IMG/VR virus record: IMGVR_UViG_3300008261_000001
Span: 1-64,000 of that record
DNA length: 64,000 bases
Reading direction: 5' to 3' (one strand)
Every line of letters starts with the position of its first letter. The first letter of the stretch is position 1. Below are positions 28,001-64,000 of the stretch, in pieces. The notes under the pieces were generated by a model that did not search any database, had not been told where the DNA came from, and worked only from the letters and a program-made list of their open reading frames with translations. Made by a program: the position numbers and the translations under genes.

Positions 28001-31000
28001 CTAGCGGTTCGTCAGACTCTTTAGTGCAAATAGATCAGGCTTCGGATAAACCGAGCTTTCCATTTTAGCCAAAGTCCCTTGAGTCCGATGTGTCCTCGTT
28101 TTAATCCAAGCCATTCGTGACTCCCTCGCCTGTAAAACACCCAACCCATCATCCAAGTCACTCGGCAAACCTGAGCCCAACTCCCCATAACCCTCCGTTA
28201 TTAAAACAGAGTCCTCTATCACAACACGCCTGTCCAAGACACTTAAACAGGTGTTTGTGTTCACAAAAGGCTTTGAGCTTGTTAAGCCCTTAATGTTGTC
28301 CAACAACAACTCATTAGACGGATGTGTAGGATCCCCCTCACCCACAAGGCTCATGTAATCGTCTGCCTCATAGTCTGCCCAACTGACCATGTCCGTAGGA
28401 AACGACATAAACCTACGCACACGCTCAGACCAAGATAGTGTCCTCTCCCGATAAAATAAGAAGTCTTCAGCTACGCTCTGCACCAACCCATTTTTCATCC
28501 GAACTATCCGATACGAGAAGGGATGTACGCTATCGGTAGTCGTCGAATAAGTGCCTCCCTCCACCCCTGAGGTCACCCTTAAGGGATTTCCTAAATCTCC
28601 ACCAACACTAGGCAAGAGGTTGTAGGTGGACTTATCCTTAGTCCCTACACTACCGCTTACTATGAGGTAATCAAGTCCAACCTCTAGAACACGATACGAA
28701 CCTCTGTTGTCGTCCAACTCATGTGGCTCACCCTCTATGTACCCAACCTCACCTAGCTTGCCCTGATCCCCACGCGGTGGATACCCATACTCTACAGGTG
28801 AACTATCCAATAACGCCCCTTGTGGATCTATCACAAGGTAATCACCCACAAGGACACCAAGATCTAAGAAGTCTGCATTGGTATCCACGAGCTTACCCTC
28901 TAGAGGAACGGATATGCCCTCTTGTGCAGGAGACTCGTAAAGCACCTCAAACCCCTGTGAGAAGTACTCATCAAACGACTGCAACTGAGGAATAAGCCCA
29001 CCCACCCTTGTCTTAATCCTAAAGCTGTAAGCCTCCGCGATAGATGAACCCCTTACCCAACTACAAGTCAACTCCCCATCCACAACCCCCACAACCCTCA
29101 AGTACAACGCCTCTGTTCCGTCCTCCTTGTGGATAAACACATGGTCTCCCATCTGCACCACATTAGAGAAGTTTCCAATTTGGGTATCCGTCCCATCGGT
29201 GTCTTCTTCAATCAGATAGTTCACTTGCTTGGGAGTTAGGACATACACGCCCTCGCCCTCGTCTGTAAGATTTAACACCAAGCCCTCTCTCCCCTCATAA
29301 ACATAACGCAAAGAGGAGACACCCTCAACCACACCCTTTAGGACATCGGTGAACCTACGAGGTCTCCTAGCCACCAACTGCACCCTCTCTGTGAAATCCC
29401 ATGCGGGTAAATCCGATAGGGTGTAATCTATGGGGCTTCTTACATTACTACTGCCGTCTCCAAATACACTCTTGGTTGAATAGTCTCTCACCAACAGCGG
29501 AAAAGACTTATCCAAGTATATTCCACCTAAGACCGTCACGCTCATGGATAATACATCTAGGGGCAATAAGAACCCCTCCCCATAAGAGTTAACATCGGTG
29601 ACTTCACCTAAAGAACCCCACTCTATTCCGTAAACGACTCCGTCTGTACCCCTAAGAGCCGTAAGAGATGACGAGGTATCCCCTCCACCAGCTACACCAA
29701 GTGTAAACTGAATACTTCCACTTAAAGTACAAGGAGCTTCGCTAGGCACAAGGGAGGTCTTAACAAGGTCGAACTTAGCCCTTGTCCCACCTGTAATCAC
29801 TTGCCCATACGCCTCACCCAATATGTCGCTCAGTTCACTGAAGTCCACGACCGTCCCATCTAAATACGCCACGGAGCCATCTACAAAACTAAAGCTCGTC
29901 TCTGTCCTTGAGGCATAAGATATCCGTAGGGCTGATCGACCATAGACGGAGTCGTACACACCCAAAGTCGTAGACATGGGTCTAGATGAAACCCCCACTG
30001 AGTCTAAAATAACAATCAAGTCCCCAACAGAACCAAAGAAAGAGGACAACTCGGTGTTGTCTGTACTCAGTGTGGCTGAGATACCCAATACGCTTAAACC
30101 TGTCACCTTAGGGAATGAAATAACAACAGACTGACTCTGTGTCACAATCTCTCTAATCTCTTCGTCTGCGACACCCTCCGTGTAAAACTCCACTCGGTGA
30201 AGTCCAGAGTTATGCCCAGAGCTAACAACTAAGAAATCTCCCTTCAGAATATTATCCGCAGGTAAAGAGAGATTATGGATAACACCAGATAGGTTATCCG
30301 TAGAGCCCCCACTCAACACCAAGCCCATGTCCCCCTCACCGACATAGATAACACCTTGTTCGTTGACCTCCGACCCTACCATAATGGATAAACCGACCCC
30401 ACTCAAAGCAACCGAGTTTTCACCGCTTGAGCGATATCCGTAGATTAATAACCCATCGGATAAGATTTCTTTAATCTCAAAGGCTGAACCCCCATTTATG
30501 ACGGACGAGTTATTCACATCGGAAGATACGATGTGAGTACCACCCCCACCACCTACGGACTCATAAACAAGAAAACCGCTGTCCAAAACCTCAACCGAGG
30601 ACGAGTAGCTACCTTGTACCTCATAAGAGTCAAATAATGGATAACTCTCCCTAATAGAGACACGATCCGATGGGATATAAGCCGATGGGGATTGGGCTGT
30701 ATAGCCCAAGTGGAAATCCATAAACCAAGCCGAACCCACACCTGTGTAGATGGTCGTACCGCTTGTGGTGGTTAAGCCACCCAAGCCCCCCCAAAATGAG
30801 GAAGCTCTGAATAACCAAGTCTCACCCGTAAAGGCAGGAGCAGGTGGGACATTGGGATTATCTATGGGTGAGTCCACGATGGTGAGCGTGTTGCCCACAT
30901 AGGTGAAGGAAGTCATGTTGTCTGGTGAGTACGCCACATAACCAAAGCCAAACCTTTGGAAACTCACCGTCCAATCTGTCACGCCCCTTGTAAAAGTAAA

Positions 31001-34000
31001 CCGACCATATCGGATTAACCCTCCGTTCAAGTACACATCTAGCCGTATCTCGTTACCTGTGCTACCCTCGCCCGCAAGGTAGTCGAAATAAAGGAAATAA
31101 TCTCTGTACTTGGTGTTGGAAAACACGAGTTCTACAGTCGATACATCGTACTTGCCAGAGCTAGGGATACCCTCGCTCAAGGTCTCCGTTACGCTCACAC
31201 CGACCGCGTCATCGGATAAGTGATAAACGAGAGCGTTATTGACTCTGTAAGAGAGAGAACCACCCGAGTTCGAGGCGGAGAACCTCGGTGGCATGATTTC
31301 AGTTCCGTTTATCCAACCCAACTCCAGAAGCCTGTCCTCGAACACCATGAGGTCTGATTGTCTAGGTGTTTGTACACACTCACCAATCGCTGTGGCTACA
31401 GAGTAGTCATATGTTGTGACAAGGACACCATCCACGCCCTCTACGCCATCGTCCCTAACCTCATCTGGATAAACATATTCAAGGCTCCCATTGTTGTCTG
31501 CTTGTGCTGTAAGTCTCTCTAAATAGGGAGGAACCGTGACGAGAATATCCTTTTCTGTTAAGGGCTTCTTAAAGGGTATAGACTCGTCTCCGTCGTCGTT
31601 TACACCCAATCCCATGAGTGCTGGATACACATAAGGTTCCAAGCTAGTGTTTCCAAAAGTAACCGACCCCTCAAGAGCCGTGTGTGCCGAGGGGACATTT
31701 TGACCTAAGATTTCTTTAATAGGATAGTTAGGGTCAGACCCACTTGGCAAGGTTATGTCGAATATCTCACCCTCTGCCGACCTTAGTCCCACATCGACAC
31801 CCACACGATAAACACTGCTGTCTCCTTCTTCGTCCAAATCGAGGGCAAAGCTCTGAACAATCGTGTCTCCCCTCTTGGGGGCAAAAGCTGAACCAAAGGC
31901 TGTTATTAAGCTACCCTCCAAGACCACCACACACCCATTTACGATTTCTTTAATCCTCGCGTTCCGAGGTTCTCCAGTTAATGAAAACACAGAGTCATAG
32001 GCATACTCCCCCTCGTTCAATACGGGAGAGAAGCCAACACCATCAACACCCAACTGTAGCTTATCCCCCACACGCAACCCATTAAATACCCTTTCTAAAT
32101 TCCCCACCACCACATCGGATAAATCCCCACCCTCAGATAAGAACCTATCTGTTATTGGATAACCAGTAAGTGGGTCTATGGGAAACTCACTCAGTGGGAC
32201 AGCGGATAAGATGAGGCTAGGTCTTCCTACAGAGCTAGGAGCATATTCACTAAACCCATTAGGCGAATACGACACAACTCTGAACCTTGCTCCCCTCTTA
32301 GAGAGAGTTAAGCTGGATATGTTTTTTAATGAACCGAAAGCTGGGTTTTCTACGAGTGCTATGACATCCGTAAAAGTGCTCTCAAAGTCCCTAAAAAAGA
32401 ACAACTCCCCACCGCCTCGATAAGTCATCATCTTAGCCGACTGCGGATACAGCCTCGACTCTACACTCGGTTTCCACAAGGGCGAATAAATGGGAGCGTA
32501 CTCATACTTAATGAATGGATAACCCACACCCATGTCATAAGACATACGCTTTTCATAAGAAACCAAAGCGTAGTCGTCTATCTCGTTCTCTATGAGATTC
32601 CTCTGTGTAGATTTCTTCTTCTTAAAGTCCAAGACGCTCGATACACCCTCTGCATCTATCAAGTATCTTGGATAAATCTCCCTTGTGATGGGGTCTTCTA
32701 ATCCCGCACCACACCACTTGTCTCCCCTCAAAAGCTCGAACTTAAACAACCCATCCGCATCACCCACGACCTTGCCCGTTGTACTTGAGACAAGCTCGTC
32801 CACTGGCTTAATAAAACCATCGTATCTCTTTATCCAATTTCTAGCCACCACATCAGAGGCGAGAAGATCAAAATATCCAATAGACCTCCCTCGCTGAGTG
32901 TTTTCTGTCCGAGTTATCTTCGCCCCAAATCCCCTCTTGTCACTCACCTTGAGACTATCCAATAACTCTCTCTCTACCTCGCCTTCATAGGTTTGTTCAG
33001 CGACTGTTCTGAAGTAAAACACATCTGGGGCATACACCATGCACTTAGCGTAAATCTTCTTGCCCGTGTGCTCAGTCGGAACTCTCCTTTCCGTAAAACT
33101 TAACTCGTACTTCGGATACTCCACCTCGCCTGTGGCTAAAACCCTCTCACTGACCACCCCTTGTGCCGTATGCTTTAAGTAATAACTCTCACCCACAGAT
33201 ACGCCCAAACCACCCAACAAGTTTAACACATCCGAACTCAGAGCGTAGTCAACCCCCTCTACAAGCTCATAACCCAAACCCTCCGACTCCACATAACGGA
33301 TAAGAGTATAGCCCTTATCCGTTAAAACCTTGCTCGATAAAGCTAAAGATTTATCCCCCACTTTAAGCACAGCCCTCATCGACACCAATAACTCACTCAC
33401 ATTGTGTTCTGCCGTTTGCCCCCTCACTCCTAAAATAGTCACCCCATTAATCAAAGACACCGAAAGTACCTCGTAAGCAATACCTGCCAACATCAATAAA
33501 CCACCCACCTTAAATAAATCCCTCAAGTCACCCTCTACAGAAATCTCCCCACCACCCAAACGGCTCTTACAAACAACCCCACTTACGCTCTTGAAAACAT
33601 AACCAGATGCCCTCAAGACACTCACATCACTCGACTTTATCCCATACCTCGCAGGAGGATACACGGATAAGTTTCCATTAGAACCGACCGCAGTCACCCT
33701 AAAGATATGTCCAGATAGATTTAACAAATCATCTACAGCCACTAAACCACTCGGTATCCAACTCGAAATCGTACTGCTACCAATACTTATCTCTAAGTCC
33801 TCAACCTCTTTTATTCCAGTAGATACCCTAACCGAATACTCCCCACCCATAGACCTCGTCACATAATAACTAACACGCACATCCCCCACCGCGTTCACAT
33901 AAATAATCCTGTCACTCGTTATGCTCGCACCAGATGTGACAATAGATGCCCCGTCATACAAAGTAAATAAATCACTATCCAAGACCACCCCTCGCTCCAA

Positions 34001-36697
34001 CCCCCCATAACTGTAAACTCCGCTCTCCAATAAAACCGCACTCTCCTCCCTAACTAAAAATAAAACACCCTCCAAGACACGCTCGCTCTCCGTAAAAGGA
34101 ATATAAGACACCTCAACACCCACACCAGACTCTAAAGGAGACTCAAAAGATATAGCACCAGTGCTAACCTCATATCTCACACGCCCCCTGTCCAATAACT
34201 CCATCAACTCTAAAGCAACACCCTCACCAAATGGACTCGATAAGTCGTCCAATGACGCACTCACCTCCGCCCTGTCCGTTAAAACATCTCTCGGAACCCC
34301 CTTGTAATAACACACACCCACCCAACTGCTATCCAATACCCCATCGCTCTCAAAATATATCCGTCCACTCACCGAGTCCCTCGTAAAACCATAACCATCT
34401 ACAATAACACCCTCCTCATAGGTGACACCATCAACCTCTAATCTGTAATAACCATCTCGCCTCTGAATATCCGATATGTAAAAATCACCCAATAACTCCC
34501 TCTTTAAAATCACTAAGGGATAATAAACCGAACCCCCAACCTCCCTCAAATATAAACTAGATGTAGGATGCACATTGGATAAATCCATACCCCAATTGCG
34601 AATAATGTACACCTCACAACTACGCCTCTCACTGTAAAGCCTCTCCCAACACTCCCCCAACACTAAATCAGAACCACCCACACCCCCACCCTCATGCTCC
34701 TCCCATATGTTAGAGGATTCATCTATCCTATCCATACTCGATAAAACCCCATCCCCTGAGATAACACGCCTCCATAAAACCACCCCAGATGTTATCTGCC
34801 TAACAAAGTTCCCCTCCGCCTTATCCAAATCCTCTAAACGACCACTACCCACCACATTAAGCCAACCCCTCAGAAATCTTAAACGCCCCCCCAACCCATA
34901 CAAAACATCAAAATCTACACCCTCACTCAAAACCTCACCACCTATAGACAAACCACCCACCAACGACAAAACTCCACCACTCGTCTCTAAACCATCCAAT
35001 ACCCCACGCACATAACCACTACGAGAAACAACACCCAACCATGTAATCGAGTTATCCATATCCAAACCATACTCAATGTCCTCCCCCTTCGTTAAATAAC
35101 CACCACCCTCCACCCTAAAGTGCCTGCTACCCGTTGCGTCCGCCCCACCCCTAAATAAAGACACCTCACCCAAACCACTCAGCAGACTTAAAGATAAACC
35201 CCCACCACCGACCACACCCACCTCCTCGTCATCATAACTTACATAACCACCCACACTAAGTGAACCCACACTTAAAAAGACACCACCCGCCCAACGCTCA
35301 TGTGGCACTAAACCCAACTTATCCAAATCCCCAGACACAGACTCCCCTAAGACCCTTATGTGTCCATAACGATCCACATCCACTAAACCCTCCCCCCCTA
35401 CAAGATCCCCCCCTACCCACGACACCAAATCCCCATCAACTAAAATACTCCCACTGCCCGATAAAGGCTTGCTCGATACCATACCCAAACCCACCCTGTC
35501 CATACCCACTAACCCCGTGCCGTACTTGGCCCCCGTTAAATCCACTCGCCCCCCTGTGTACACCCTCCCAAAGTCCCCTGAGCCCAACGATACATACGCC
35601 ACACCCACCTTACGCTTCTTAAACTCAGGTACATCCTCTACATACTCACACAATAAAACATCCCCACTCAATAACCTCACATACGAACCCAATAAATAAC
35701 CCCTAAAGAAACCACGCCTCACCCCCTCACCCAATCCGTCCTTCTCCCACTCCCAACCACTCACCCCAAATGAACCCTCCCCTATTACCCCACTTTCCAA
35801 CTCACTCTCCGACTCCATAAACACACGATCACTACATAACGCTAACCCCTCATACACCAACTCGTAATCCCCCGACCAATACACACGCCCAGCCTCCCTA
35901 TCAAACTCAAAATCAGTCAAGAAATCCCCCACACCACCCACTCGCCTCAATAATGGAAACTCATTCAAACGAGGACAAGGAGATAAATAATCTCCTGACC
36001 TTAACGCACTACCGCCCACTAAAGATCCCCTGATTAAGATTATCCCCAAACCCCTGTCCTCGTCACTCAACGAACCCCACCTTAACTCACTACCCTCACT
36101 ATCCATTAACCCATATGAAGAAGATAAATCACCACCCCCAACAAGAATGTCCTCACCCACTGTTAGCCTCTTCGAACCCACCACCAACTCGTCACCTAAC
36201 CTCAAACCCACTAACCCCCCATCACCCACTACACCAAATGACTCCCCACGACCCCCACCCAATAACTTCCATGTCGAACCCTCCCACTTAAAACGCTCCC
36301 TCACACCATCGTTTGCCGTCCACCAATAACTCACCCCCTCCAAATATACCAACCCATCCGGCTCACCCCCCTCTGATTCTGCTACTCCTAAACCACTATC
36401 CAATACCTCTAAACTCTCCCCCCCACGAGTCGCTGATCTTATCCTATTCCCACCAAGCTCCACACCCCCATACCAAATACCACCCCCTACAGATACCCAA
36501 CTGATCTCCCTCGATACATCACCCACTGCACCATCCCCCGCAGATATCCATAAGACTTCCCCCTCCCCCCTTATAGCCTCATAGTCATAACCCAATAAAT
36601 CCACCCCTCCCCTCACAATACGACTGCCCAAACCCGTCAGCGTGTTGTTCCCATCCCCAGACCTTACATCTAGCCTCAGTAATGTTAATGTACTCAT
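28001..36697 (-). CDS. Giant protein (2898 aa), probable baseplate/tail-associated structural protein
   Basis: Uninterrupted 8.7-kb ORF; recurring L.EG(V/E)D(Y/F/I) motifs; function inferred. Confidence 0.75.
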   Translation of the reverse strand: MSTLTLLRLDVRSGDGNNTLTGLGSRIVRGGVDLLGYDYEAIRGEGEVLWISAGDGAVGDVSREISWVSVGGGIWYGGVELGGNRIRSATRGGESLEVLDSGLGVAESEGGEPDGLVYLEGVSYWWTANDGVRERFKWEGSTWKLLGGGRGESFGVVGDGGLVGLRLGDELVVGSKRLTVGEDILVGGGDLSSSYGLMDSEGSELRWGSLSDEDRGLGIILIRGSLVGGSALRSGDYLSPCPRLNEFPLLRRVGGVGDFLTDFEFDREAGRVYWSGDYELVYEGLALCSDRVFMESESELESGVIGEGSFGVSGWEWEKDGLGEGVRRGFFRGYLLGSYVRLLSGDVLLCEYVEDVPEFKKRKVGVAYVSLGSGDFGRVYTGGRVDLTGAKYGTGLVGMDRVGLGMVSSKPLSGSGSILVDGDLVSWVGGDLVGGEGLVDVDRYGHIRVLGESVSGDLDKLGLVPHERWAGGVFLSVGSLSVGGYVSYDDEEVGVVGGGGLSLSLLSGLGEVSLFRGGADATGSRHFRVEGGGYLTKGEDIEYGLDMDNSITWLGVVSRSGYVRGVLDGLETSGGVLSLVGGLSIGGEVLSEGVDFDVLYGLGGRLRFLRGWLNVVGSGRLEDLDKAEGNFVRQITSGVVLWRRVISGDGVLSSMDRIDESSNIWEEHEGGGVGGSDLVLGECWERLYSERRSCEVYIIRNWGMDLSNVHPTSSLYLREVGGSVYYPLVILKRELLGDFYISDIQRRDGYYRLEVDGVTYEEGVIVDGYGFTRDSVSGRIYFESDGVLDSSWVGVCYYKGVPRDVLTDRAEVSASLDDLSSPFGEGVALELMELLDRGRVRYEVSTGAISFESPLESGVGVEVSYIPFTESERVLEGVLFLVREESAVLLESGVYSYGGLERGVVLDSDLFTLYDGASIVTSGASITSDRIIYVNAVGDVRVSYYVTRSMGGEYSVRVSTGIKEVEDLEISIGSSTISSWIPSGLVAVDDLLNLSGHIFRVTAVGSNGNLSVYPPARYGIKSSDVSVLRASGYVFKSVSGVVCKSRLGGGEISVEGDLRDLFKVGGLLMLAGIAYEVLSVSLINGVTILGVRGQTAEHNVSELLVSMRAVLKVGDKSLALSSKVLTDKGYTLIRYVESEGLGYELVEGVDYALSSDVLNLLGGLGVSVGESYYLKHTAQGVVSERVLATGEVEYPKYELSFTERRVPTEHTGKKIYAKCMVYAPDVFYFRTVAEQTYEGEVERELLDSLKVSDKRGFGAKITRTENTQRGRSIGYFDLLASDVVARNWIKRYDGFIKPVDELVSSTTGKVVGDADGLFKFELLRGDKWCGAGLEDPITREIYPRYLIDAEGVSSVLDFKKKKSTQRNLIENEIDDYALVSYEKRMSYDMGVGYPFIKYEYAPIYSPLWKPSVESRLYPQSAKMMTYRGGGELFFFRDFESTFTDVIALVENPAFGSLKNISSLTLSKRGARFRVVSYSPNGFSEYAPSSVGRPSLILSAVPLSEFPIDPLTGYPITDRFLSEGGDLSDVVVGNLERVFNGLRVGDKLQLGVDGVGFSPVLNEGEYAYDSVFSLTGEPRNARIKEIVNGCVVVLEGSLITAFGSAFAPKRGDTIVQSFALDLDEEGDSSVYRVGVDVGLRSAEGEIFDITLPSGSDPNYPIKEILGQNVPSAHTALEGSVTFGNTSLEPYVYPALMGLGVNDDGDESIPFKKPLTEKDILVTVPPYLERLTAQADNNGSLEYVYPDEVRDDGVEGVDGVLVTTYDYSVATAIGECVQTPRQSDLMVFEDRLLELGWINGTEIMPPRFSASNSGGSLSYRVNNALVYHLSDDAVGVSVTETLSEGIPSSGKYDVSTVELVFSNTKYRDYFLYFDYLAGEGSTGNEIRLDVYLNGGLIRYGRFTFTRGVTDWTVSFQRFGFGYVAYSPDNMTSFTYVGNTLTIVDSPIDNPNVPPAPAFTGETWLFRASSFWGGLGGLTTTSGTTIYTGVGSAWFMDFHLGYTAQSPSAYIPSDRVSIRESYPLFDSYEVQGSYSSSVEVLDSGFLVYESVGGGGGTHIVSSDVNNSSVINGGSAFEIKEILSDGLLIYGYRSSGENSVALSGVGLSIMVGSEVNEQGVIYVGEGDMGLVLSGGSTDNLSGVIHNLSLPADNILKGDFLVVSSGHNSGLHRVEFYTEGVADEEIREIVTQSQSVVISFPKVTGLSVLGISATLSTDNTELSSFFGSVGDLIVILDSVGVSSRPMSTTLGVYDSVYGRSALRISYASRTETSFSFVDGSVAYLDGTVVDFSELSDILGEAYGQVITGGTRAKFDLVKTSLVPSEAPCTLSGSIQFTLGVAGGGDTSSSLTALRGTDGVVYGIEWGSLGEVTDVNSYGEGFLLPLDVLSMSVTVLGGIYLDKSFPLLVRDYSTKSVFGDGSSNVRSPIDYTLSDLPAWDFTERVQLVARRPRRFTDVLKGVVEGVSSLRYVYEGREGLVLNLTDEGEGVYVLTPKQVNYLIEEDTDGTDTQIGNFSNVVQMGDHVFIHKEDGTEALYLRVVGVVDGELTCSWVRGSSIAEAYSFRIKTRVGGLIPQLQSFDEYFSQGFEVLYESPAQEGISVPLEGKLVDTNADFLDLGVLVGDYLVIDPQGALLDSSPVEYGYPPRGDQGKLGEVGYIEGEPHELDDNRGSYRVLEVGLDYLIVSGSVGTKDKSTYNLLPSVGGDLGNPLRVTSGVEGGTYSTTTDSVHPFSYRIVRMKNGLVQSVAEDFLFYRERTLSWSERVRRFMSFPTDMVSWADYEADDYMSLVGEGDPTHPSNELLLDNIKGLTSSKPFVNTNTCLSVLDRRVVIEDSVLITEGYGELGSGLPSDLDDGLGVLQARESRMAWIKTRTHRTQGTLAKMESSVYPKPDLFALKSLTNR

Positions 36698-36753
36698 CTC
36701 TGTCTACACCCCTCATGTTAAAGTCTAAGATTATAATACCCTAACCTATCCCA

Positions 36754-37326
36754 CTATCCCACTATCCTTAATGGCATAGGCACACTCACAGGCACTATAG
36801 AAGGAACACCACTCAACGCCCCTACTGCCACACCACCACCAAAATAACCCGTTAAACCCAAACCCAATCCCTCCGCTAACTGATCCACAAAACCACCCAC
36901 CAAACCCACTCCCCTCAACCCCAACCTTAAATCATCCGCAAGACGACCCCCAAATACCACACCAACACCTGTAAATGTACCCACCACTGGATAAGGCAAC
37001 CCATAAGAACCCACCGTAAACACCGCCCCCCTCAAACCCAACTCCACACCCAACGCTAACTGACCCACCGATACACCCACCAAACCCACTCCCCTCAAAC
37101 CACTCTCCAATACCCCCACAGGACTCGACGATAAACTGAATGTACCCATAGGTACTCCACTACCTCCCACACCCAAACCCACACATAACACCTGCCCCCT
37201 CAATAAACCCAACCTCAAACCCTCCTCTATACCCGTACTTATACGCAACCACTCCCCACCCACTAAACCAACCCCAACTCCAGCATTATATACCAACCCC
37301 CCCAATACACCCCTCATTAAACTCAT
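36754..37326 (-). CDS. Gly/Val/Leu-rich hypothetical protein
   Basis: 190-aa ORF with GAGGGG RBS, first gene of the leftward operon; extreme composition bias. Confidence 0.65.
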   Translation of the reverse strand: MSLMRGVLGGLVYNAGVGVGLVGGEWLRISTGIEEGLRLGLLRGQVLCVGLGVGGSGVPMGTFSLSSSPVGVLESGLRGVGLVGVSVGQLALGVELGLRGAVFTVGSYGLPYPVVGTFTGVGVVFGGRLADDLRLGLRGVGLVGGFVDQLAEGLGLGLTGYFGGGVAVGALSGVPSIVPVSVPMPLRIVG

Positions 37327-37397
37327 GTCGCACCCCCTCCTCTACATATGTTGTTATCCATCCTATCTGCACTAAATACACACATAAACAAATAACA

Positions 37398-37735
37398 CCA
37401 TATACCCCTATAAGCATACACCCATATACACCCATATACCCCTATAAGCATATGCGACCATATACCCCTACTTCGACCACATACCCTATAAGCATATATG
37501 ACCACACCCCCAACCGCAGAAGACTCACCCAACCACGACCCCATCACCTATCACCGTACTCCGACTAAGCATATATGACCCTATGTGCTTATGTGAATAT
37601 ATGACCCTATGTGCTTATATGACCATATGTGCTTATATGACCATATGTGCTTATATGACCATATGTGCTTATATAAGACCCCATTTTTAACATTTAATAT
37701 TTAACATATTTTAACATTTAACATTCAACAAAAGT
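37398..37735. repeat. Iteron-like repeats plus AT-rich tract (origin-like island 1)
   Basis: CCATATACCCCTATAAGCATA-like x3-4 (37398-37503); 18-bp ATATGACCATATGTGCTT x4 (about 37600-37671); TTTAACA-rich AT tract 37684-37735. Confidence 0.85.
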
Positions 37736-37769
37736 TAATACACATAGATGGATACTTTCTGTTTATGGT

Positions 37770-37817
37770 GGTGAACACACGAATACCGCTCGTAGAAGCT
37801 GTATCGGTGTGTTCACC
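37770..37817. other. Inverted repeat / hairpin
   Basis: GGTGAACACAC...GTGTGTTCACC arms. Confidence 0.8.
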
Positions 37818-37872
37818 CTCCAGAAGACAAACCTGCATCCAAAATGCGACTGAAAAAACAAAAACGGATTAA

Positions 37873-37926
37873 AACCCACCCCCCACACCTACTAAAAGCA
37901 ACAAGGTAGGTGTGGGGGGGTGGGTT
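37873..37926. terminator. Strong hairpin, possible terminator of the leftward gene 37968..38204
   Basis: AACCCACCCCCCACACCTAC...GTAGGTGTGGGGGGGTGGGTT stem; short T-run follows on the minus strand. Confidence 0.6.
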
Positions 37927-37967
37927 CTCTCTAGGGGGTCTCTCACACCCCCACCTATCTCGCTCTC

Positions 37968-38204
37968 TTAGCCGATGACCACATAGTCTGCGTTAATCTT
38001 GTCCATGTGGTTGAGGATGTCGTTGTTCTCGTTGCGGTAGTAGCCTGTGTAGTAGTTTCCCATCTCCCACTCCACCACGAGCTTCTGACCGAGGATGTTT
38101 TCGAGGTCAGCGTAAGCGTTGTCGGTGAGGGTGAAGTAGATGGTGGTGGTGTTGGGCTGGCGGTAGATGACTGAGGTCTCTGCGTGGAGCTTGTTCTTTA
38201 ACAA
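37968..38204 (-). CDS. Small hypothetical protein
   Basis: TTG start after AAGGA; downstream of the cassette at 38277. Confidence 0.7.
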   Translation of the reverse strand: MLKNKLHAETSVIYRQPNTTTIYFTLTDNAYADLENILGQKLVVEWEMGNYYTGYYRNENNDILNHMDKINADYVVIG

Positions 38205-38276
38205 GGCTGTTGTCCTTAGGCGAGTGGGTTAGGCGAGTGGGTTAGGTTAGGTTGTTGTCTCTCTCGCTCTGCCCCA

Positions 38277-38306
38277 CTAATAGACGAGCTTTGGGACTTG
38301 GGATAA
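38277..38306 (-). promoter_or_regulatory. Promoter-like cassette (18-nt spacer)
   Basis: TTATCC-N18-TATTAG; divergent pair with 38348. Confidence 0.75.
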
Positions 38307-39814: not shown

Positions 39815-40189
39815 ATGGATGAGCGTTCGAATAGGATAAGCACTTTGTTTGGTGACTTGGGTGTTCTTTCTACAGCGTTAGAGAAGACATTCCCTTACAG
39901 GTGCAGGGTGTGTGATGGTCGTGGGGGGGAGGTGACTTGGGTAGATTGTGAGCCTGTGGTGAAGGCGTGTACGAGTTGTTATTACAACGAGCTTGATCCT
40001 CTGAACATAAATCTCAGGATGATCTTTAAGGGTTATTTGCCGACTTATGGGTGGTGGTCTTGGATAAGTCCTACAGCAGGGTTCGACTTACTGGACGCGG
40101 AGGGTACAGATAGGGTGGATTTACTGACAGACGAGATAGACCGTCTGAGGGCGGAGTTTAATGGGCTTATCGTGATATTGGATAACTAA
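39815..40189 (+). CDS. Zn-finger protein (CxxCxGxGG...CxxC), paralog family B
   Basis: CRVCDGRGG, CTSC, LDPLNINL, ISPTAGFDLLD. Confidence 0.8.
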   Translation: MDERSNRISTLFGDLGVLSTALEKTFPYRCRVCDGRGGEVTWVDCEPVVKACTSCYYNELDPLNINLRMIFKGYLPTYGWWSWISPTAGFDLLDAEGTDRVDLLTDEIDRLRAEFNGLIVILDN

Positions 40190-40231
40190 CTCGTGATATT
40201 GGATAACTAACTCGTGATATTGGATAACTAA
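40171..40231. repeat. 21-bp tandem repeat CGTGATATTGGATAACTAACT x~3
   Basis: Exact copies at 40171, 40192 and 40213; each holds TTGGATAA. Confidence 0.95.
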
Positions 40232-40942: not shown

Positions 40943-41776
40943 GTGGGGATAGTGGATAAGTCAATAAACAAACACTTACGAGAGGTTTTAGAGATGAAGT
41001 ATGATCTAAAGAGATTTAAGAACCTTTATGAGATGGGGGCGACACGCTCCTCCCTTGAGGCTGAGTTTAAGGTGTTGCCTATCACTATTGATAGGCGGAT
41101 ACTTGCTTTGGGGTTGAAGCCCCGTGGGGTTGATTTTCTCAAGGGCAGGGTGGGGCGGTTAAAGGAGCTTTTAGGGGCTGGGTATCACCTACAGACCATC
41201 TCTAAGGAGTTGATGGTGCCTTTGTCTTCTCTAACCTTCTTCATGAAGGAAGAGGGGTTAGAGAAGACAAAGAGGGTCACAGAGGCTCGTAGGGCTAGGG
41301 TAGCCCAAGCGGTGGAGTTGAGGGGGAAGAATATGACCTTGAGGGATATTGGGTCAGTTATGGGTATGACGATGGAGGGGGTTCGTCTGTTATTGCTCGA
41401 TGGTGGTATGAGCGGACGGATAGGTTGTCATAAGGAGGGAGTGAGGAAGAAGAGGGAGCAGTTTATTAAGAGGTATAAAATGGATTTGTGGGAGGGTTTG
41501 GCTTATGGAAAGACGCTCACGCAGATAGCGAAGGAGCTTGGTCTTTCGCGGAGTCAGATCACTAAGCTCTCAAAAGAGGTGGGTGGTTCTGAGATGATGG
41601 ATATAGCGAAGGAGTTGAAGTTTGAGTATCTCAGTAAGCTCTATCAAGAGGGATTATCGGTTCAACAGATAGCGGATATGTACGAAATGAACGCTATGGG
41701 CTTGTATGTGTTTCTAAGGCGGAGGGGTAATAAGTTTAGGAAAGCTGGTGGGCGTAGGGGGAAGCGGACTCAGTAA
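40943..41776 (+). CDS. Multi-HTH DNA-binding protein with a sigma-70 region-4-like HTH
   Basis: TLRDIGSVMGMTMEGVR, TLTQIAKELGLSRSQI, SVQQIADMY, HLQTISKEL. Confidence 0.75.
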   Translation: MGIVDKSINKHLREVLEMKYDLKRFKNLYEMGATRSSLEAEFKVLPITIDRRILALGLKPRGVDFLKGRVGRLKELLGAGYHLQTISKELMVPLSSLTFFMKEEGLEKTKRVTEARRARVAQAVELRGKNMTLRDIGSVMGMTMEGVRLLLLDGGMSGRIGCHKEGVRKKREQFIKRYKMDLWEGLAYGKTLTQIAKELGLSRSQITKLSKEVGGSEMMDIAKELKFEYLSKLYQEGLSVQQIADMYEMNAMGLYVFLRRRGNKFRKAGGRRGKRTQ

Positions 41777-45498: not shown

Positions 45499-46107
45499 CT
45501 ATTGAGGGATAACCGACCAATCCAAAATGTACTCGATGAGGGTAGTTAAGAAGTCTTTCCTATCTGCCTCGTAGTCGATGTAGTGAGCGTGTTCCCATAG
45601 GTCTATGGTCAATAACGGCACATGACCCCTCATCATGGGTGTGTTCTGATTGAGCGTTGTGTACACCCTCAAGGTGTTCGTGTGTGGGACTAAAACAAGC
45701 CACACCCAACCCGAGCCAAAATGACTCGTACCCTCTTGGATAAGTTTATCCTTTAACTGCTCGTATCCACCGAAGGTGTTGGACACCGCAGTTTGAAACC
45801 AAAGGGGCGTGTCTATGTAAGACCCAGGGCTTGGGGACAAACACCTCCAATAGAAGTCGTGATTCCACACCCCTCCCCCAAAGTCTATCACCGACTGCTT
45901 TAACTCCAAAGGTATCCAATGTGGATTGGATAACACCTCATAGAGACCACCTAGACGGTCGAGGAGTGTGGGGTCTCCCTTTAGGGCTTTGTTGAGCTTG
46001 TCTACATACCCTTTATGGTGAGTCCCATGATGGAGTCTCATAGCTTTCTCAGATAGTACAGGCTCTAGGGCATCGTATGCGTAGGGCAAGGGCTTCAGCT
46101 TAATCAT
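45499..46107 (-). CDS. sod: Fe/Mn superoxide dismutase
   Basis: LPYAYDALEP, HHGTHHKGY, NHDFYW, FGSGWVWL, DLWEHAHY with all four metal ligands. Confidence 0.97.
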   Translation of the reverse strand: MIKLKPLPYAYDALEPVLSEKAMRLHHGTHHKGYVDKLNKALKGDPTLLDRLGGLYEVLSNPHWIPLELKQSVIDFGGGVWNHDFYWRCLSPSPGSYIDTPLWFQTAVSNTFGGYEQLKDKLIQEGTSHFGSGWVWLVLVPHTNTLRVYTTLNQNTPMMRGHVPLLTIDLWEHAHYIDYEADRKDFLTTLIEYILDWSVIPQ

Positions 46108-47975: not shown

Positions 47976-48000
47976 TGTCTCTCTCCTTCGTGAGTTAAGT

Positions 48001-48066
48001 GAGCTTAGGGGCTAAGTGAGCTTAGGGGCTAAGTGAGCTTAGGGGGCTAAGTGAGATTAGGGGCTA
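48001..48066. repeat. 17-bp tandem repeat GAGCTTAGGGGCTAAGT x~4
   Basis: Units at 48001, 48018, 48035 and 48053. Confidence 0.95.
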
Positions 48067-50968: not shown

Positions 50969-51038
50969 GGGTTAGGGCTAGTGGGGGTTAGGGCTAGTGG
51001 GGGTTAGAGCTAGTGGGGGTTAGGGCTAGTGGGGCTAG
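50969..51038. repeat. 16-bp tandem repeat GGGTTAGGGCTAGTGG x4
   Basis: Units at 50969, 50985, 51001 and 51017. Confidence 0.95.
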
Positions 51039-52071: not shown

Positions 52072-52181
52072 ACCTAGATTTCTACCTAGATTTCTACCCC
52101 CCACCCACCTCCCACCTCTGCCCTCTCCCTTAACCTCTGCCCTCTCCCTTAACCTCTGCCCCCTCCCCCCCACCTCTGCCC
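52072..52181. repeat. C-rich intergenic repeats (ACCTAGATTTCT x2; ACCTCTGCCCTCTCCCTTA x2+)
   Basis: Direct repeats read from sequence. Confidence 0.85.
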
Positions 52182-53634: not shown

Positions 53635-53695
53635 GGGGGTTAAGGGCTAGAGGGTAAGGGGCTAGTGGGTAAGGGGCTAGAGGGTAAGGCTAGAG
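53628..53695. repeat. About 15-bp G-rich tandem repeat GGGTAAGGGGCTAG(A/T) x~4
   Basis: Between convergent stop codons. Confidence 0.9.
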
Positions 53696-61694: not shown

Positions 61695-62007
61695 ACAGGA
61701 CTCGCCCTATAAGGGAAGATACATAGGGTCTATCAGTGGGGGTGTATAAGGGGACACATAGGGGTAAGGGATAAGGGGACACACACCCTACGAGAACTAC
61801 ATCCCCCCCCTACCCACCTAGAAATCTAAACCCACCAAGTTCAAAACTATCCAATATCCGAGAAATATCCAATATTGAAGTTCTGTAGACACCAGAAACC
61901 TGTAGAATCGCGTCAATAAGTGGACTTAGGCACCCCCCTAGCCCAATTTGGCATATTAACTACGCACTGAAAATGCAAACCCAAATTTGAAACCATAGTT
62001 AAACCGC

Positions 62008-62110
62008 CCTTACCCTTACCCTCCATATAGATCTACCTTATCCCTTATCCTCCATATAGACCCATATCCCTTATCCGCATATAGACCCTTACCCTTATCC
62101 CATATAGACC
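62008..62110. repeat. Four degenerate 23-28-bp repeats CC(C)TTA(T/C)CC...CATATAGA (origin-like island 2)
   Basis: Read directly; inside a 650-bp non-coding gap at a C-to-G strand switch. Confidence 0.85.
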
Positions 62111-62310
62111 GTCTTACATATGAGGATTCATCTTGCTCCTTATATACGGCTGATTGGGGTGAGTGGTTTAGTTCGAAAAGGGGTTAGGATTCTGTTAAAT
62201 TTTTCAAAATGGAAACTTGGAAAAGTGGTCCTAAAAATAGTTTTGGGTAAATTTTTTTGGGTTGATTTTGAAACCCCCTATTCTGCTTGAGTGTTTATAT
62301 GTGGGCGTAG

Positions 62311-62348
62311 GGTGTATTGGGCATAAGGTGTATTGGGCATAAGGTGTA
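62311..62348. repeat. 16-bp repeat GGTGTATTGGGCATAA x2.4
   Basis: Exact copies at 62311 and 62327. Confidence 0.9.
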
Positions 62349-62352
62349 GTAT

Positions 62353-62784
62353 ATGAGAGCAAAGACGACAAAGAACAGTGGGGGGGAGAGGGTGTGGGAG
62401 GGTTGGGTATTGGATAAGTCTATATTGCTGTCGGGGGTGTTTGATTATGATTTAGCGTTGGGTTTGTATGAGGACATAGTGTGTGGTTTGGAGGAGTCTA
62501 ATTTAAAGTTGAGGGGTAGTGGAGGTGGGGACAAGTACAAGATAAGGGAGTTTGTGGTGGGTAGTAGGGTTGTGAGGCAGGAGAGTTTGGAGTTATCGAT
62601 GAGGATTTACTTAGTGCGGTCGAGTTTATTTGGTGGTGCTATATGTTATGACATAATGGTGGTGGGAGAGTTTGAGGATGAGGGTATGTTATCGGTATCG
62701 GGTAAGAGGTTAGATTTGCCGATGGTGGAGGACTCTATATGGGTGGACATAAGGGTATGTTGGAGGAGTTTGGGAGGTGAGTAG
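62353..62784 (+). CDS. Small protein, paralog family A
   Basis: GGERVW, IWVDIRVCW. Confidence 0.7.
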   Translation: MRAKTTKNSGGERVWEGWVLDKSILLSGVFDYDLALGLYEDIVCGLEESNLKLRGSGGGDKYKIREFVVGSRVVRQESLELSMRIYLVRSSLFGGAICYDIMVVGEFEDEGMLSVSGKRLDLPMVEDSIWVDIRVCWRSLGGE

Positions 62785-63139
62785 TTGGGAGGTGACTAAG
62801 ATGAACGAGGTAGGGGAGAGGGTATGGAGGGAGGAGTGGGTGTGGGTTTTTGTAAGTTCTCATTTTACGGTAGAGAAGAGGGAGTATGTATTACACCGAG
62901 GGTTGAGGGAGGCTGGGTTTGAGTTATTTTCGCCTGTGGGGGGATTTATTTACGAGTTGGGTGTGTTAGTGGGTGGGGAGCCGAGGTATATAAGGGTGTG
63001 TGGTCTTGAGTCGGATGGTGGACTTGAGATAGGGATATACAATAAGTGGGATTTATTAGTTCGTGGTGAGTTAAGTGGGGGGGAGTGGGGGCTTTTATGG
63101 GAGCGTATAAGGGGGTTATGGGTGAGTAGTTTTGTATAA
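62777..63139 (+). CDS. Small protein, paralog family A
   Basis: VGERVW, LREAGF, LWERIRGLW. Confidence 0.75.
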   Translation: MSSWEVTKMNEVGERVWREEWVWVFVSSHFTVEKREYVLHRGLREAGFELFSPVGGFIYELGVLVGGEPRYIRVCGLESDGGLEIGIYNKWDLLVRGELSGGEWGLLWERIRGLWVSSFV

Positions 63140-63163
63140 GGGGCTTGGTAAGGAGGTTAGAGC

Positions 63164-63535
63164 ATGAGAAATGTTACGGAGAGAGACTTAGAGACTGGGA
63201 AGCGTAGGTGGAAAAGTGAAGTTTGTTATTTATTGGATGAGGGTGCGTTTATTTTAGTGTTGGATGTGTTGCACGAGGGTTTATTGGAGTCAGGTTTTAA
63301 GAAGTTAAATGTGGGTGGTTTTGAGTATGAGTTAGTGACAGCGGATGGGGAGTATTGGATAAGGTTGAGTTTGAAAGAGAATTCTTTGTTGGAGGTGAGT
63401 TTGTATAACAAGTGGGACATATTGGGTCGGGTGGAGTTGGAGAGAAAAGATTGGATAAGTTTATGGGAGCGTATAAGGGATTTGTGGGAGTGGGTATTGA
63501 GGTTTGCGGCGAATAAGTATCCGAACAATAAATGA
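63164..63535 (+). CDS. Small protein, paralog family A
   Basis: TGKRRW, LLESGF, LWERIRDLW; shares YNKWD.L.R.EL with the previous gene. Confidence 0.75.
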   Translation: MRNVTERDLETGKRRWKSEVCYLLDEGAFILVLDVLHEGLLESGFKKLNVGGFEYELVTADGEYWIRLSLKENSLLEVSLYNKWDILGRVELERKDWISLWERIRDLWEWVLRFAANKYPNNK

Positions 63536-63542
63536 TCGGGGT

Positions 63543-64000
63543 TTAGGCTAGTTCAGCGAGGGATTTTTGGATAGAGGCGATAACGCCTTTGGTTTCGACC
63601 TTGTAGATAAGTTCGAGGGTCTCTGGGTCATTGGCGTAGAGTTCTACTGCCTTTTTAGCTCTCTTAGCCCAGTGGATATTCATATCCCATTCGACACCGC
63701 CTTCGAGGGTGACGATCTTGGATTGATCAGTACCTGTTGCTACAGCACCTGTGGCGGGGGTGGATTCGATAGCTTGTAGGGTTTGTAGGTCTTCGTTAGG
63801 GGTGGGGTTGTTCTCTTCTTCTAGGGGTGTGGCATCGTTTTGGTCTTCGATGACGGTCACTTTAAAGGAAGAGCGTGTGCCTTCTAGTTCTTCGAGTTTG
63901 GAGAGTTCGCGGTCTATAGCGGAGGCATCGGTGAGGATGGTCTTTTGCTTAGAGGCGGTCTTCAGTGCGGGTGTGATGGACTTAGAGGCTTGTGCTTCAG
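63543..64000 (-). CDS. Hypothetical protein, 5' end outside the window
   Basis: Frame stays open from 63860 to the window edge (EAQASKSITPALKTASKQK...). Confidence 0.75.
   Translation of the reverse strand, partial: EAQASKSITPALKTASKQKTILTDASAIDRELSKLEELEGTRSSFKVTVIEDQNDATPLEEENNPTPNEDLQTLQAIESTPATGAVATGTDQSKIVTLEGGVEWDMNIHWAKRAKKAVELYANDPETLELIYKVETKGVIASIQKSLAELA

What the first reader, a model, noticed from the sequence alone, without database searches (positions are those of the whole stretch)
28001..37326. Giant ORF whose amino-acid content follows a DNA strand-bias gradient
Seen: the plus strand becomes progressively C/A-rich from about 33 kb to 37.3 kb (35881-35940: 27 C, 22 A, 7 T, 4 G). 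The first about 1000 aa of the 2898-aa protein and the 190-aa gene before it are dominated by Gly, Val, Leu, Ser, Asp, Glu, Arg and are poor in Ala, Thr, Asn, Gln, Pro, Lys, whereas the distal part looks ordinary. Inference: local strand-specific mutation (C->T, A->G on the coding strand, as in long-lived single-stranded DNA) is rewriting a probable structural protein while the frame stays open.
Basis: partly seen in the sequence, partly recalled or inferred. Interest (0 to 1): 0.62.

Follow-up and report, generated by a model that had tools for sequence, protein, structure and literature searches.

The report
Conserved cytosine-poor island in huge-phage gene
A clade of uncultured freshwater huge phages keeps a 1-5 kb stretch at the start of one tail-module operon almost free of cytosine on the coding strand. 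This has made the first ~1000 residues of a 2898-residue protein Gly/Val/Leu-rich, and it is an old, maintained DNA-level feature rather than fresh damage.

Summary
From about 33.1 to 37.6 kb the + strand has a GC skew of -0.42 to -0.76, against 0.04 +/- 0.15 elsewhere in this 290-kb phage genome. Coding-strand C is 5-10% at all three codon positions and in the leader. The giant protein's first 1000 aa and the 190-aa protein are about 75% G/V/L/S/D/E/R.

The cause lies in the DNA, not the protein. At 4-fold sites C is 0-5%, against 26% genome-wide. The end of the island falls at different places in orthologues.

It is not a private, ongoing rewriting. At least ten related phages (26-65% protein identity) carry the same island. 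It starts at the same operon start, and sharply where I looked closely, and it decays over 1-5 kb. Synonymous sites between this phage and its closest relative are nearly saturated, yet both keep the skew. Lake populations from 16 studies hold the stretch, and the four laid on it are mostly 99% or more identical.

The shared signal is C loss with G gain, plus some purine gain. It is not simply C->T with A->G.

A second, divergent island (62.1-63.6 kb) is also conserved in a relative.

The best reading is a persistent strand-asymmetric pressure anchored at a transcription or replication start, probably R-loop or D-loop exposure of the non-template strand. Selection for a G-rich, C-poor strand is not excluded.

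The parts
33100..37600 (-). GC-skew island 1. The coding (-) strand is C-depleted and G/T-rich. There is a plateau from about 37.6 to 34 kb, then decay to about 33 kb, with residual skew down to 28 kb.
   Evidence: Coding-strand C is 5-10% at all codon positions, and 4-fold C is 4%.
28001..36697 (-). Giant ORF of 2898 aa (P0001). Only its first 1000-1200 codons lie in the island. The N-terminal part is predicted all-beta. No family match was found.
   Evidence: Homologues P0003-P0022 and P0030 share the N-terminal composition gradient. Frame 1 has 0 stops against 88 and 97 in the other sense frames.
36754..37326 (-). 190-aa gene (P0002), the first gene of the operon. It is 26% Gly, 17% Val and 16% Leu and carries an internal 74-nt duplication. 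It is a conserved partner of the giant gene.
   Evidence: 4-fold C is 0 of 111.
37327..37560 (-). Skewed non-coding leader (C 7%) with degenerate repeats of the type GGTCATATATGCTTA / GGGGTATATGG. The skew begins at about 37560.
37571..37674 (.). Tandem array of an 18-mer (TATGTGCTTATATGACCA, 4.7 copies), iteron-like. Its copy number varies between lake populations.
   Evidence: A 36-nt skip at 37607-37644 is seen in runs X2 and X6. The motif is unique to this locus.
37680..37745 (.). AT-rich block with repeated ATGTTAAA units, next to the 18-mer array.
37770..37817 (-). Stem-loop (GGTGAACACAC...GTGTGTTCACC) with the loop sequence GCTTCTACGAGCGGT. A related hairpin precedes the island in the closest relative, L021.
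37871..37928 (-). Strong G+C hairpin followed by a T run. It is the likely terminator of the upstream C-rich small gene (37968-38204), so the island begins a new transcription unit.
   Evidence: The spurious microRNA hits mark the hairpin. Equivalent terminators are seen in L002, L004, L007 and L021.
62007..62110 (.). Tandem array of 25-29-mers (CCCTTATCC.CATATAGACC, about 4 copies) directly upstream of island 2.
62110..63600 (+). GC-skew island 2. It points the other way and covers three paralogous small genes (62353-62784, 62777-63139, 63164-63535).
   Evidence: 4-fold C is 0 of 126. A syntenic island exists in relative G001 at 115.4-117.8 kb.

Best explanation
The window is the first 64 kb of a 290-kb uncultured freshwater huge phage. 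A two-gene operon in its tail/baseplate region, made of a ~190-aa gene and a ~2900-aa beta-rich protein gene, begins with a 'GC-skew island'. Starting at the head of the transcription unit and running 1-5 kb downstream, the non-template (coding) strand is almost cleared of C and enriched in G. The pressure acts on the DNA: it is seen at synonymous sites and in the leader as well as at replacement sites. The proteins simply follow it, becoming richer in Gly, Val, Leu, Arg, Glu and Trp and poorer in Ala, Thr, Pro, Gln, Asn and Lys. They stay folded and stay under purifying selection. The island is an old, actively maintained equilibrium shared by a whole phage clade, not a recent burst of damage.

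Inferred mechanism: transcription from the promoter at the island's head repeatedly leaves the non-template strand unpaired. This could be an R-loop, possibly one used to prime leading-strand synthesis as at phage T4 oriF/oriG, ColE1 and mitochondrial OH. The exposed strand loses C, and the hybrid-protected template strand keeps its C, which shows up as G gain on the coding strand. The chance of exposure falls with distance, which gives the gradient. A second, divergently oriented island 24.5 kb away fits the same scheme.

Shown: the DNA-level cause, the anchoring at the operon start, conservation, equilibrium and purifying selection. Inferred: R-loop or single-strand exposure, and any origin function.
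For: DNA-level cause. 4-fold C is 0-5% in islands against 26% genome-wide, and the leader is skewed too.

The island end is not tied to a protein domain. Decay takes about 1 kb in L005, about 3 kb in L002/L012/L014/L018 and 4-5 kb in WIN, L001, L004 and L016.

Anchoring. In every locus where the upstream DNA was held the skew jumps at the start of the ~190-aa gene, and in the loci whose upstream sequence I read this follows a terminator. In L021 it goes from -0.22 to +0.74 within 250 nt. Most relatives share a promoter-like motif and hairpin upstream.

Not a general coding-strand effect. The genome-wide coding-sense GC3 skew is 0.009 +/- 0.26.

Conservation. All homologues down to 26% identity show the protein gradient, and the seven most distant ones do not.

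Persistence. 4-fold sites between WIN and L001 are near saturation, yet both keep C at 0-5%. C gains are 19 against 14 losses.

Purifying selection. There are no stops in frame 1. N-terminal identity is 57-63% against 62-74% distally. pN/pS is 0.28. The fold is predicted all-beta, with pLDDT 70-89 over long stretches.

Geometry. In both islands the G-rich strand is the one read 5'->3' away from the start, and the cumulative GC skew minimum lies at 62147.

R-loop propensity. There are 145 G3+ runs in 3.3 kb, against 130 +/- 5 in synonymous shuffles. Windows in 35.0-37.6 kb are the most hybrid-favourable in the genome (using parameters recalled from memory).

Precedents. T4 promoter-plus-R-loop origins (PMC3016281) and GC skew linked to R-loops at 5' gene ends (PMC3787257).
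Against: There is no direct evidence of R-loops, a transcription start or replication initiation. No RNA run holds the locus, and only contigs, not reads, were available.

The composition shift is not the simple deamination signature. T falls in L001 and A rises in L002. Net amino-acid flows include D->E and F->L, which need a pyrimidine->G change at the third position.

The calculated hybrid advantage is unremarkable for 33-35 kb, although the skew is still strong there.

An elevated substitution density in the island, expected for a mutational hot zone, was seen in one close pair (15 against 6.8 differences per kb) but not in a second pair.

Equilibrium fluxes cannot separate biased mutation from selection.

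The iteron-like and AT-rich elements upstream are specific to this phage and are not conserved.
Confidence: 0.45

Rival explanations
1. The island is kept by selection on the nucleic acid itself, not by biased mutation. A G-rich, C-poor sense strand or transcript would be advantageous. Possible reasons are to build an R-loop that serves as a replication primer, to give the termination factor Rho (which loads on C-rich, G-poor RNA) no entry site on a very long transcript, or to escape a C-dependent nuclease or chain terminator.
For: GC% stays constant while C is swapped for G in every lineage. A and T behave differently in different lineages, so only C and G look constrained. C is 0 of 111 and 0 of 126 at 4-fold sites. 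G runs slightly exceed synonymous shuffles. The feature is conserved over deep divergence, together with a conserved upstream motif. One close pair shows no rate elevation.
Against: A functional element would be expected to have a fixed length, but the length varies from 1 to 5 kb among orthologues and fades gradually. The cost is large, because the composition of a folded protein is remodelled. No other long operon in the genome shows it. Synonymous sites in the island turn over at least as fast as elsewhere. Replication-linked skews in bacteria also show G>C with variable AT skew (own knowledge), so the C/G-only pattern is not specific to selection.
Confidence: 0.3
2. One reading: a current, lineage-specific wave of C->T and A->G deamination on long-lived single-stranded DNA is eroding this particular gene.
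For: In this phage the 4-fold sites are keto-rich (A 11-18, C 4, G 36-43, T 35-49), as on a mitochondrial heavy strand. One close pair of relatives shows about twice as many differences in the island.
Against: The same island is present in at least ten related phages. Fluxes are near equilibrium. The skew persists across saturated synonymous divergence. Populations from 16 studies hold the stretch, and the four laid on it show only a handful of differences in the island, few of them transitions. Relatives lack the T gain and A loss.
Confidence: 0.08
3. Protein-level selection for a Gly/Val/Leu-rich N-terminal domain drives the nucleotide skew.
For: The N-terminal region is conserved and predicted to fold.
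Against: The skew is as strong or stronger at 4-fold sites and in non-coding leader DNA. The same homologous domains are unskewed in L005 and L002 and fully ordinary in distant homologues. Unrelated small genes in island 2 share the bias.
Confidence: 0.03
4. Assembly or sequencing artefact, or a recently acquired foreign segment that has not yet adapted to the genome's composition.
For: Contigs fragment and k-mer depth dips across 34.5-37.9 kb in Logan assemblies.
Against: Independent assemblies from 16 studies hold the stretch, and the four laid on it are mostly 99% or more identical. Relatives from JGI, ENA and Logan show the island. The frame is intact, synteny is conserved, and the composition changes gradually inside a single gene.
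Confidence: 0.01

Closest known systems
Heavy-strand compositional gradient of vertebrate mitochondrial DNA (strand-displacement replication; own knowledge)
   Same: One strand is driven to G/T richness, with C at only a few per cent of 4-fold sites. The strength depends on distance from a start point. Protein composition follows the DNA. The G-rich strand is the one that would be displaced by synthesis starting at the island head.
   Different: Here the effect is local (1-5 kb of a 290-kb dsDNA phage) and strongest next to the start. In relatives the partner change is purine gain rather than T gain. No evidence on the replication mode was available.
GC-skewed R-loop zones just downstream of promoters (human CpG-island promoters, PMC3787257; immunoglobulin switch regions, own knowledge)
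   Same: G exceeds C on the non-template strand, starting at the head of a transcription unit, on a kilobase scale and fading with distance. G clusters are dense.
   Different: By my recollection the amplitude here (skew 0.6-0.8) is much larger. It lies inside a translated bacterial-virus gene and reshapes a folded protein. R-loop formation was not tested here.
Phage T4 R-loop origins oriF and oriG (PMC3016281)
   Same: [quoted passage not shown] From my own knowledge, oriG lies within a large tail-fibre gene.
   Different: T4 origins are about 100 bp, made of a promoter plus an A+T-rich unwinding element. No kilobase GC-skew island is described for them. Origin activity was not tested here.
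Replication-associated GC skew of bacterial and phage chromosomes (for huge phages, PMC7162821)
   Same: The sign convention fits, with G-rich strands pointing away from the putative start. Over most of the genome the + strand is G-rich at third positions whatever the gene orientation. The cumulative-skew minimum lies at the head of island 2.
   Different: The island skew is five to ten times the genome-wide level (about 0.04), is confined to a few kilobases and begins at an operon start.

Membership tests
Mitochondrial-type single-strand deamination gradient (C->T and A->G on the displaced strand) | At neutral sites C falls and T rises, and A falls and G rises, on the same strand (keto enrichment at constant purine content). 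| tested here: inconclusive
   Met in this phage: 4-fold A 11-18, C 4, G 36-43, T 35-49, against A 23, C 26, G 19, T 33 genome-wide. Not met in relatives: in L001 T falls from 31 to 21 and purines reach 0.75, and in L002 A rises.
Mitochondrial-type single-strand deamination gradient (C->T and A->G on the displaced strand) | The bias scales with the time a site spends single-stranded during strand-displacement replication. | not testable with these tools
   No raw reads or replication intermediates were available, only contigs.
Promoter-proximal R-loop-forming GC-skew region | G exceeds C on the non-template strand, starting at the head of a transcription unit and fading downstream. | tested here: met
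   The onset follows a terminator and promoter-like motif in the relatives whose upstream sequence was read, and lies at the start of the ~190-aa gene in all loci that include it. It is sharp (within 250 nt) in L021 and decays over 1-5 kb. The start site itself is inferred, not mapped.
Promoter-proximal R-loop-forming GC-skew region | A co-transcriptional, RNase H-sensitive RNA:DNA hybrid is actually formed. | not testable with these tools
   Only indirect evidence: G-run density and nearest-neighbour hybrid energies from parameters recalled from memory.
Transcript-primed replication origin (T4 oriF/oriG, ColE1 type) | A promoter plus a downstream unwinding region that supports initiation of DNA synthesis. 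| not tested
   An AT-rich block and 18-mer iterons lie upstream in this phage only. The cumulative skew minimum at 62147 and a local minimum near 38 kb are compatible. There is no functional or coverage evidence.
Diversity-generating retroelement or other targeted hypermutation | A reverse transcriptase and a template/variable repeat pair with adenine-specific differences, and variability between close relatives. | tested here: not met
   No RVT_1 match in the genome. No template-like repeat. Populations are mostly 99% or more identical.
Tail tape-measure protein (considered for the giant ORF because of its size and position) | A long, predominantly alpha-helical protein with matches to tape-measure families. 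| tested here: not met
   The N-terminal 1000 aa are predicted almost all-beta. The C-terminal 519 aa are mixed. There are no Pfam, PHROG or PDB-profile hits.
Phage tail/baseplate module protein (virion structural) | Conserved synteny with recognisable tail or baseplate genes. | tested here: inconclusive
   The order 190 aa - giant - ~68 aa - ~800 aa - ~300 aa is conserved. The neighbour at 14225-18361 hits the tail protein and baseplate hub PHROGs. Baseplate_J lies nearby in L006, as a weak hit. Fold searches gave no usable match.

The most novel reading that the evidence does not exclude
Two divergent, conserved, kilobase-long R-loop zones (heads at 37.6 kb and 62.1 kb) act as transcript-primed, outward-firing replication starts of these huge phages. 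The long-lived displaced strand imposes a mitochondria-like mutational gradient that has remodelled the composition of a folded virion protein over evolutionary time. This would be the first case of origin-proximal single-strand mutagenesis shaping a phage structural gene.
Probability: 0.2. Interest if true: 0.8.

Novelty: new variant of a known kind. Interest (0 to 1): 0.62.

Why it matters
This is an unusually clean natural experiment. Orthologous, folded protein domains sit inside the skew island in some phages and outside it in others. That shows how far a purely nucleotide-level pressure can push amino-acid composition (about 75% of residues drawn from seven amino acids) while fold and reading frame survive.

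If the island marks an R-loop or a transcript-primed origin, it would give a sequence signature for locating replication starts or R-loop zones in uncultured huge phages, whose replication is essentially unknown.

It is also a practical warning. Composition-based gene callers, horizontal-transfer detectors and low-complexity filters will misjudge such regions, and short-read assemblies tend to break there.

Tried and rejected
1. Family, profile and fold searches for the giant protein found nothing usable. I tried Pfam, PHROGs, a PDB profile, the ESM Atlas and Foldseek against PDB and BFVD.

2. tblastn against cultured and deposited phages found only one distant uncultured 485-kb phage. The N-terminal part found nothing.

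3. Reads. All holders are kept as contigs, with no RNA holder. There were too few differences for a spectrum, and depth cannot be interpreted.

4. Polarised 4-fold changes in a quartet of relatives. Counts are small and fluxes near equilibrium, so this cannot separate mutation from selection.

5. Net amino-acid flows between strongly and weakly skewed orthologues. They mix changes compatible with transitions (A->V, K->R, I->V) with changes that need transversions (D->E, F->L), so they are not decisive.

6. Rate elevation in the island. It is significant in one close pair and absent in a second.

7. A shared promoter or iteron motif between islands 1 and 2, or elsewhere in the genome. None was found, and the repeat units are locus-specific. 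The sigma-70 and terminator scans gave no more hits than chance.

8. Canonical G-quadruplex motifs are not enriched.

9. Rfam gave only spurious hairpin hits.

10. A diversity-generating retroelement is rejected.

11. The two cytidine/dCMP-deaminase-family genes found far from the island are common in large phages (own knowledge) and explain nothing local. No RNase H (PF00075) was found.

12. DNA of the second-closest homologue, P0004, could not be fetched.

Full report
**Context.** The window is the first 64 kb of a single 290,179-bp IMG/VR virus record (linear, about 93% complete by CheckV). It encodes DnaB-like and SNF2 helicases and proteins with tail and baseplate hits. Its only relatives among deposited phages are a 485-kb uncultured huge phage and, much more weakly, a few cultured and fecal phage records. 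Logan contigs of freshwater, drinking-water and ballast-water metagenomes from 16 studies hold the stretch.

**The observation.** Positions 35881-35940 contain 27 C, 22 A, 7 T and 4 G. ORF 28001-36697(-) encodes 2898 aa and ORF 36754-37326(-) encodes 190 aa. GC skew on the + strand is -0.42 to -0.76 from 33 to 37.5 kb, against 0.041 +/- 0.147 in the rest of the genome. Only two large patches of this kind exist in 290 kb: 33.1-37.6 kb, coding on the - strand, and 62.1-64.2 kb, coding on the + strand. In both, the coding strand is the G/T-rich one. G/V/L/S/D/E/R make up 75% of aa 1-1000 and 76% of the 190-aa protein. The figures are 61% for the distal part of the giant protein and 50% for the rest of the proteome. 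The frame is truly maintained: there is no stop in 1100 codons, while the other two sense frames carry 88 and 97 stops.

**DNA or protein.** The bias is a property of the DNA.
- Coding-strand C is 5-10% at all three codon positions over the first ~1000 codons, and 7% in the non-coding leader 37327-37500.
- At 4-fold degenerate sites C is 4% in aa 1-1000, 0 of 111 in the 190-aa gene and 0 of 126 in the three genes of the second patch. Genome-wide it is 26%.
- G roughly doubles and GC% stays constant.
- Genome-wide, the coding-sense GC3 skew averages 0.009 +/- 0.26. This is therefore not a general transcription-linked bias.

**Relatives.** A word-index search with the ordinary C-terminal part found 28 homologues.
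- All those sharing 26-65% identity (P0003-P0022, P0030) show the same N-terminal gradient in amino-acid content. Seven more distant proteins of 3500-3850 aa do not.
- I obtained DNA for more than ten distinct loci. In every clade member the GC skew jumps to +0.5 to +0.8 in the coding sense. Wherever upstream DNA was held, the jump lies at the start of the ~190-aa gene. The skew then decays inside the giant gene.
- Decay takes about 1 kb in L005, about 3 kb in L002, L012, L014 and L018, and 4-5 kb in this phage, L001, L004 and L016.
- The distant L006 locus, where the giant gene sits inside a long co-directional operon, has no skew.
- Synteny is conserved: ~190 aa, giant, ~68 aa, ~800 aa, ~300 aa.
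- In the loci whose upstream sequence I read, the island follows a terminator. Most relatives share a promoter-like motif (GGTTTAAT..AATAGTTGTTTTAT) and a hairpin there.
- In L021, the closest relative that includes the upstream region, the skew changes from -0.22 to +0.74 within 250 nt.

**Is it recent?** No.
- 4-fold sites between this phage and L001 are almost randomised (p = 0.51-0.66, against a maximum of 0.65-0.68). Yet both keep C at 0-5%, while differing in their use of A and T at the same sites.
- On terminal branches of a four-phage set, C gains (19) and losses (14) in the island are about equal.
- Lake populations differ from the window at only a handful of island positions, and few of those differences are transitions.
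- The N-terminal region is about as conserved as the rest, 57-63% against 62-74% identity to P0003.
- Between a close pair pN/pS is 0.28.
- The region is predicted as a chain of beta-rich domains, with pLDDT 70-89 over long stretches.

The protein is therefore not being eroded. It lives at an equilibrium between a strong nucleotide pressure and purifying selection.

**The direction of the pressure.**
- Across the clade the only constant is C loss with G gain, plus some purine gain. In L001 T falls from 31 to 21-24% and purines reach about 75%. In L002 A rises.
- In patch 2 the 2-fold pyrimidine codons keep 21% C, although the 4-fold sites have none. This implies loss of C by transversions as well as by C->T.
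- Net amino-acid flows include changes that need transversions, such as D->E and F->L, alongside A->V, K->R and I->V.
- An elevated substitution density in the island, which a mutational hot zone predicts, appears in one close pair. There the island has 15 differences per kb against 6.8 elsewhere, pS is 0.034 against 0.019 and pN is 0.0094 against 0.0027. Fisher's test gives p = 2e-5 for all differences. A second pair shows no elevation.

**A second island.** Window 62.1-63.6 kb is the mirror image of the first. It lies just downstream of a 25-29-mer tandem array, points the other way and covers three small paralogous genes. A search for C-free runs in two relatives' whole records, followed by fetching DNA, showed a syntenic second island in G001. 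It lies at 115.4-117.8 kb, about 12.5 kb from that phage's giant-gene island, beside a homologue of the small proteins. Over most of the genome the + strand is G-rich at third positions whatever the gene orientation. The cumulative GC skew has its minimum at 62147, the head of island 2, and a local minimum at the head of island 1. The 24 kb between the islands carries many intergenic tandem arrays, two multi-HTH proteins, a superoxide dismutase and an FMN reductase.

**Mechanism.** What is shown is a persistent, strand-specific, DNA-level pressure. It starts at the head of a transcription unit and fades over kilobases.

The geometry fits exposure of the non-template strand, because the G-rich strand is the one read away from the start. 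This is the same geometry as in an R-loop, in a D-loop made by transcript-primed leading-strand synthesis (T4 oriF/oriG, PMC3016281), and for the displaced heavy strand of mitochondrial DNA. It also resembles the GC-skewed R-loop zones at the 5' ends of human genes (PMC3787257).

Supporting hints are weak:
- G runs are dense and slightly exceed synonymous shuffles.
- With nearest-neighbour energies recalled from memory, 35.0-37.6 kb is the most hybrid-favourable part of the genome, although 33-35 kb is not exceptional.
- An AT-rich block and an 18-mer iteron-like array sit upstream, but only in this phage.

Selection for a G-rich, C-poor strand or transcript explains the constant GC% and the C/G-only constraint equally well, and cannot be excluded from sequence alone. 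Protein-level selection, an artefact, foreign origin and diversity-generating retroelements are rejected.

**Verdict.** DNA does drive the protein's composition, and single-strand exposure remains the best guess. However, this is a conserved, equilibrium 'GC-skew island' of a phage clade, not an ongoing private C->T/A->G rewriting.

I know of no description of such islands in phages, and three full-text searches on GC skew in phages found none. I rate it a new variant of known strand-asymmetry phenomena and of moderate to high interest.

Noticed in passing
window 62007-63600: A second GC-skew island on the + strand, downstream of a 25-29-mer tandem array. It covers three paralogous small genes of unknown function with an LW..IR.LW C-terminal motif. 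C is 0 of 126 at 4-fold sites.
   Followed up: partly
L019 (G001:C1:115400-117800): A relative sharing 37% giant-protein identity has a syntenic second island about 12.5 kb from its giant-gene island. It covers K/E-rich genes of 232 and 474 aa, next to a homologue of the small LW..IR.LW protein.
   Followed up: partly
genome 138951-139487 (outside the window): A 178-aa gene with a coding-sense GC3 skew of 0.71, directly after a terminator-like hairpin. It may be a third small island.
   Followed up: no
genome 134120-134251, 134755-134814 and 103012-103097 (outside the window): A 132-nt G-free run, a 60-nt C-free run and an 86-nt C-free run on the + strand, far from the islands.
   Followed up: no
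window 38000-62000: Many intergenic tandem arrays of 15-29-mers with 3-5 copies, each with its own unit (for example 40170-40231, 47996-48066, 50969-51034, 52114-52167, 53644-53689). Two multi-HTH proteins lie here (40943-41776, 55270-56553) and could bind them. A Fe/Mn superoxide dismutase (45499-46107) and an FMN reductase (53677-54366) are also present.
   Followed up: partly
window 37607-37644: The 18-mer array upstream of the island is two units (36 nt) shorter in contigs of two independent lake runs, so its copy number is polymorphic.
   Followed up: no
window 34500-37900: In all four runs laid on the window, the Logan contigs break into pieces of 180-700 nt and k-mer depth drops about threefold across the most skewed part. 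The flanks assemble well. This could be sequencing bias on G-rich strands, strain mixture or something biological. It cannot be interpreted from contigs.
   Followed up: no
L022 2332-2982 and 3001-11283: In one relative the giant gene is called as two ORFs of 216 aa and 2760 aa, split inside the island. Its close relative L023 has one ORF of 2983 aa. This is either a sequencing error or a real break.
   Followed up: no
window 37968-38300: Just upstream of the terminator that precedes the island lie a C-rich small gene (37968-38204, coding-sense GC3 skew -0.48) and C/A-rich short repeats. Similar C-rich repeats precede the terminator in L004 and L007. The skew therefore changes sign at this point in several phages.
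   Followed up: partly
window 36848-36921 and 37028-37101: The 190-aa gene contains an internal 74-nt direct duplication (81% identity), which gives a repeated LRGVGLVG...QLA.G motif in the protein.
   Followed up: no
L021 4581-5075: A gene built of 15-nt repeats (about 11 copies, pentapeptide-repeat-like) lies just upstream of the island in the closest relative that includes the upstream region. It is absent at that place in the window.
   Followed up: no
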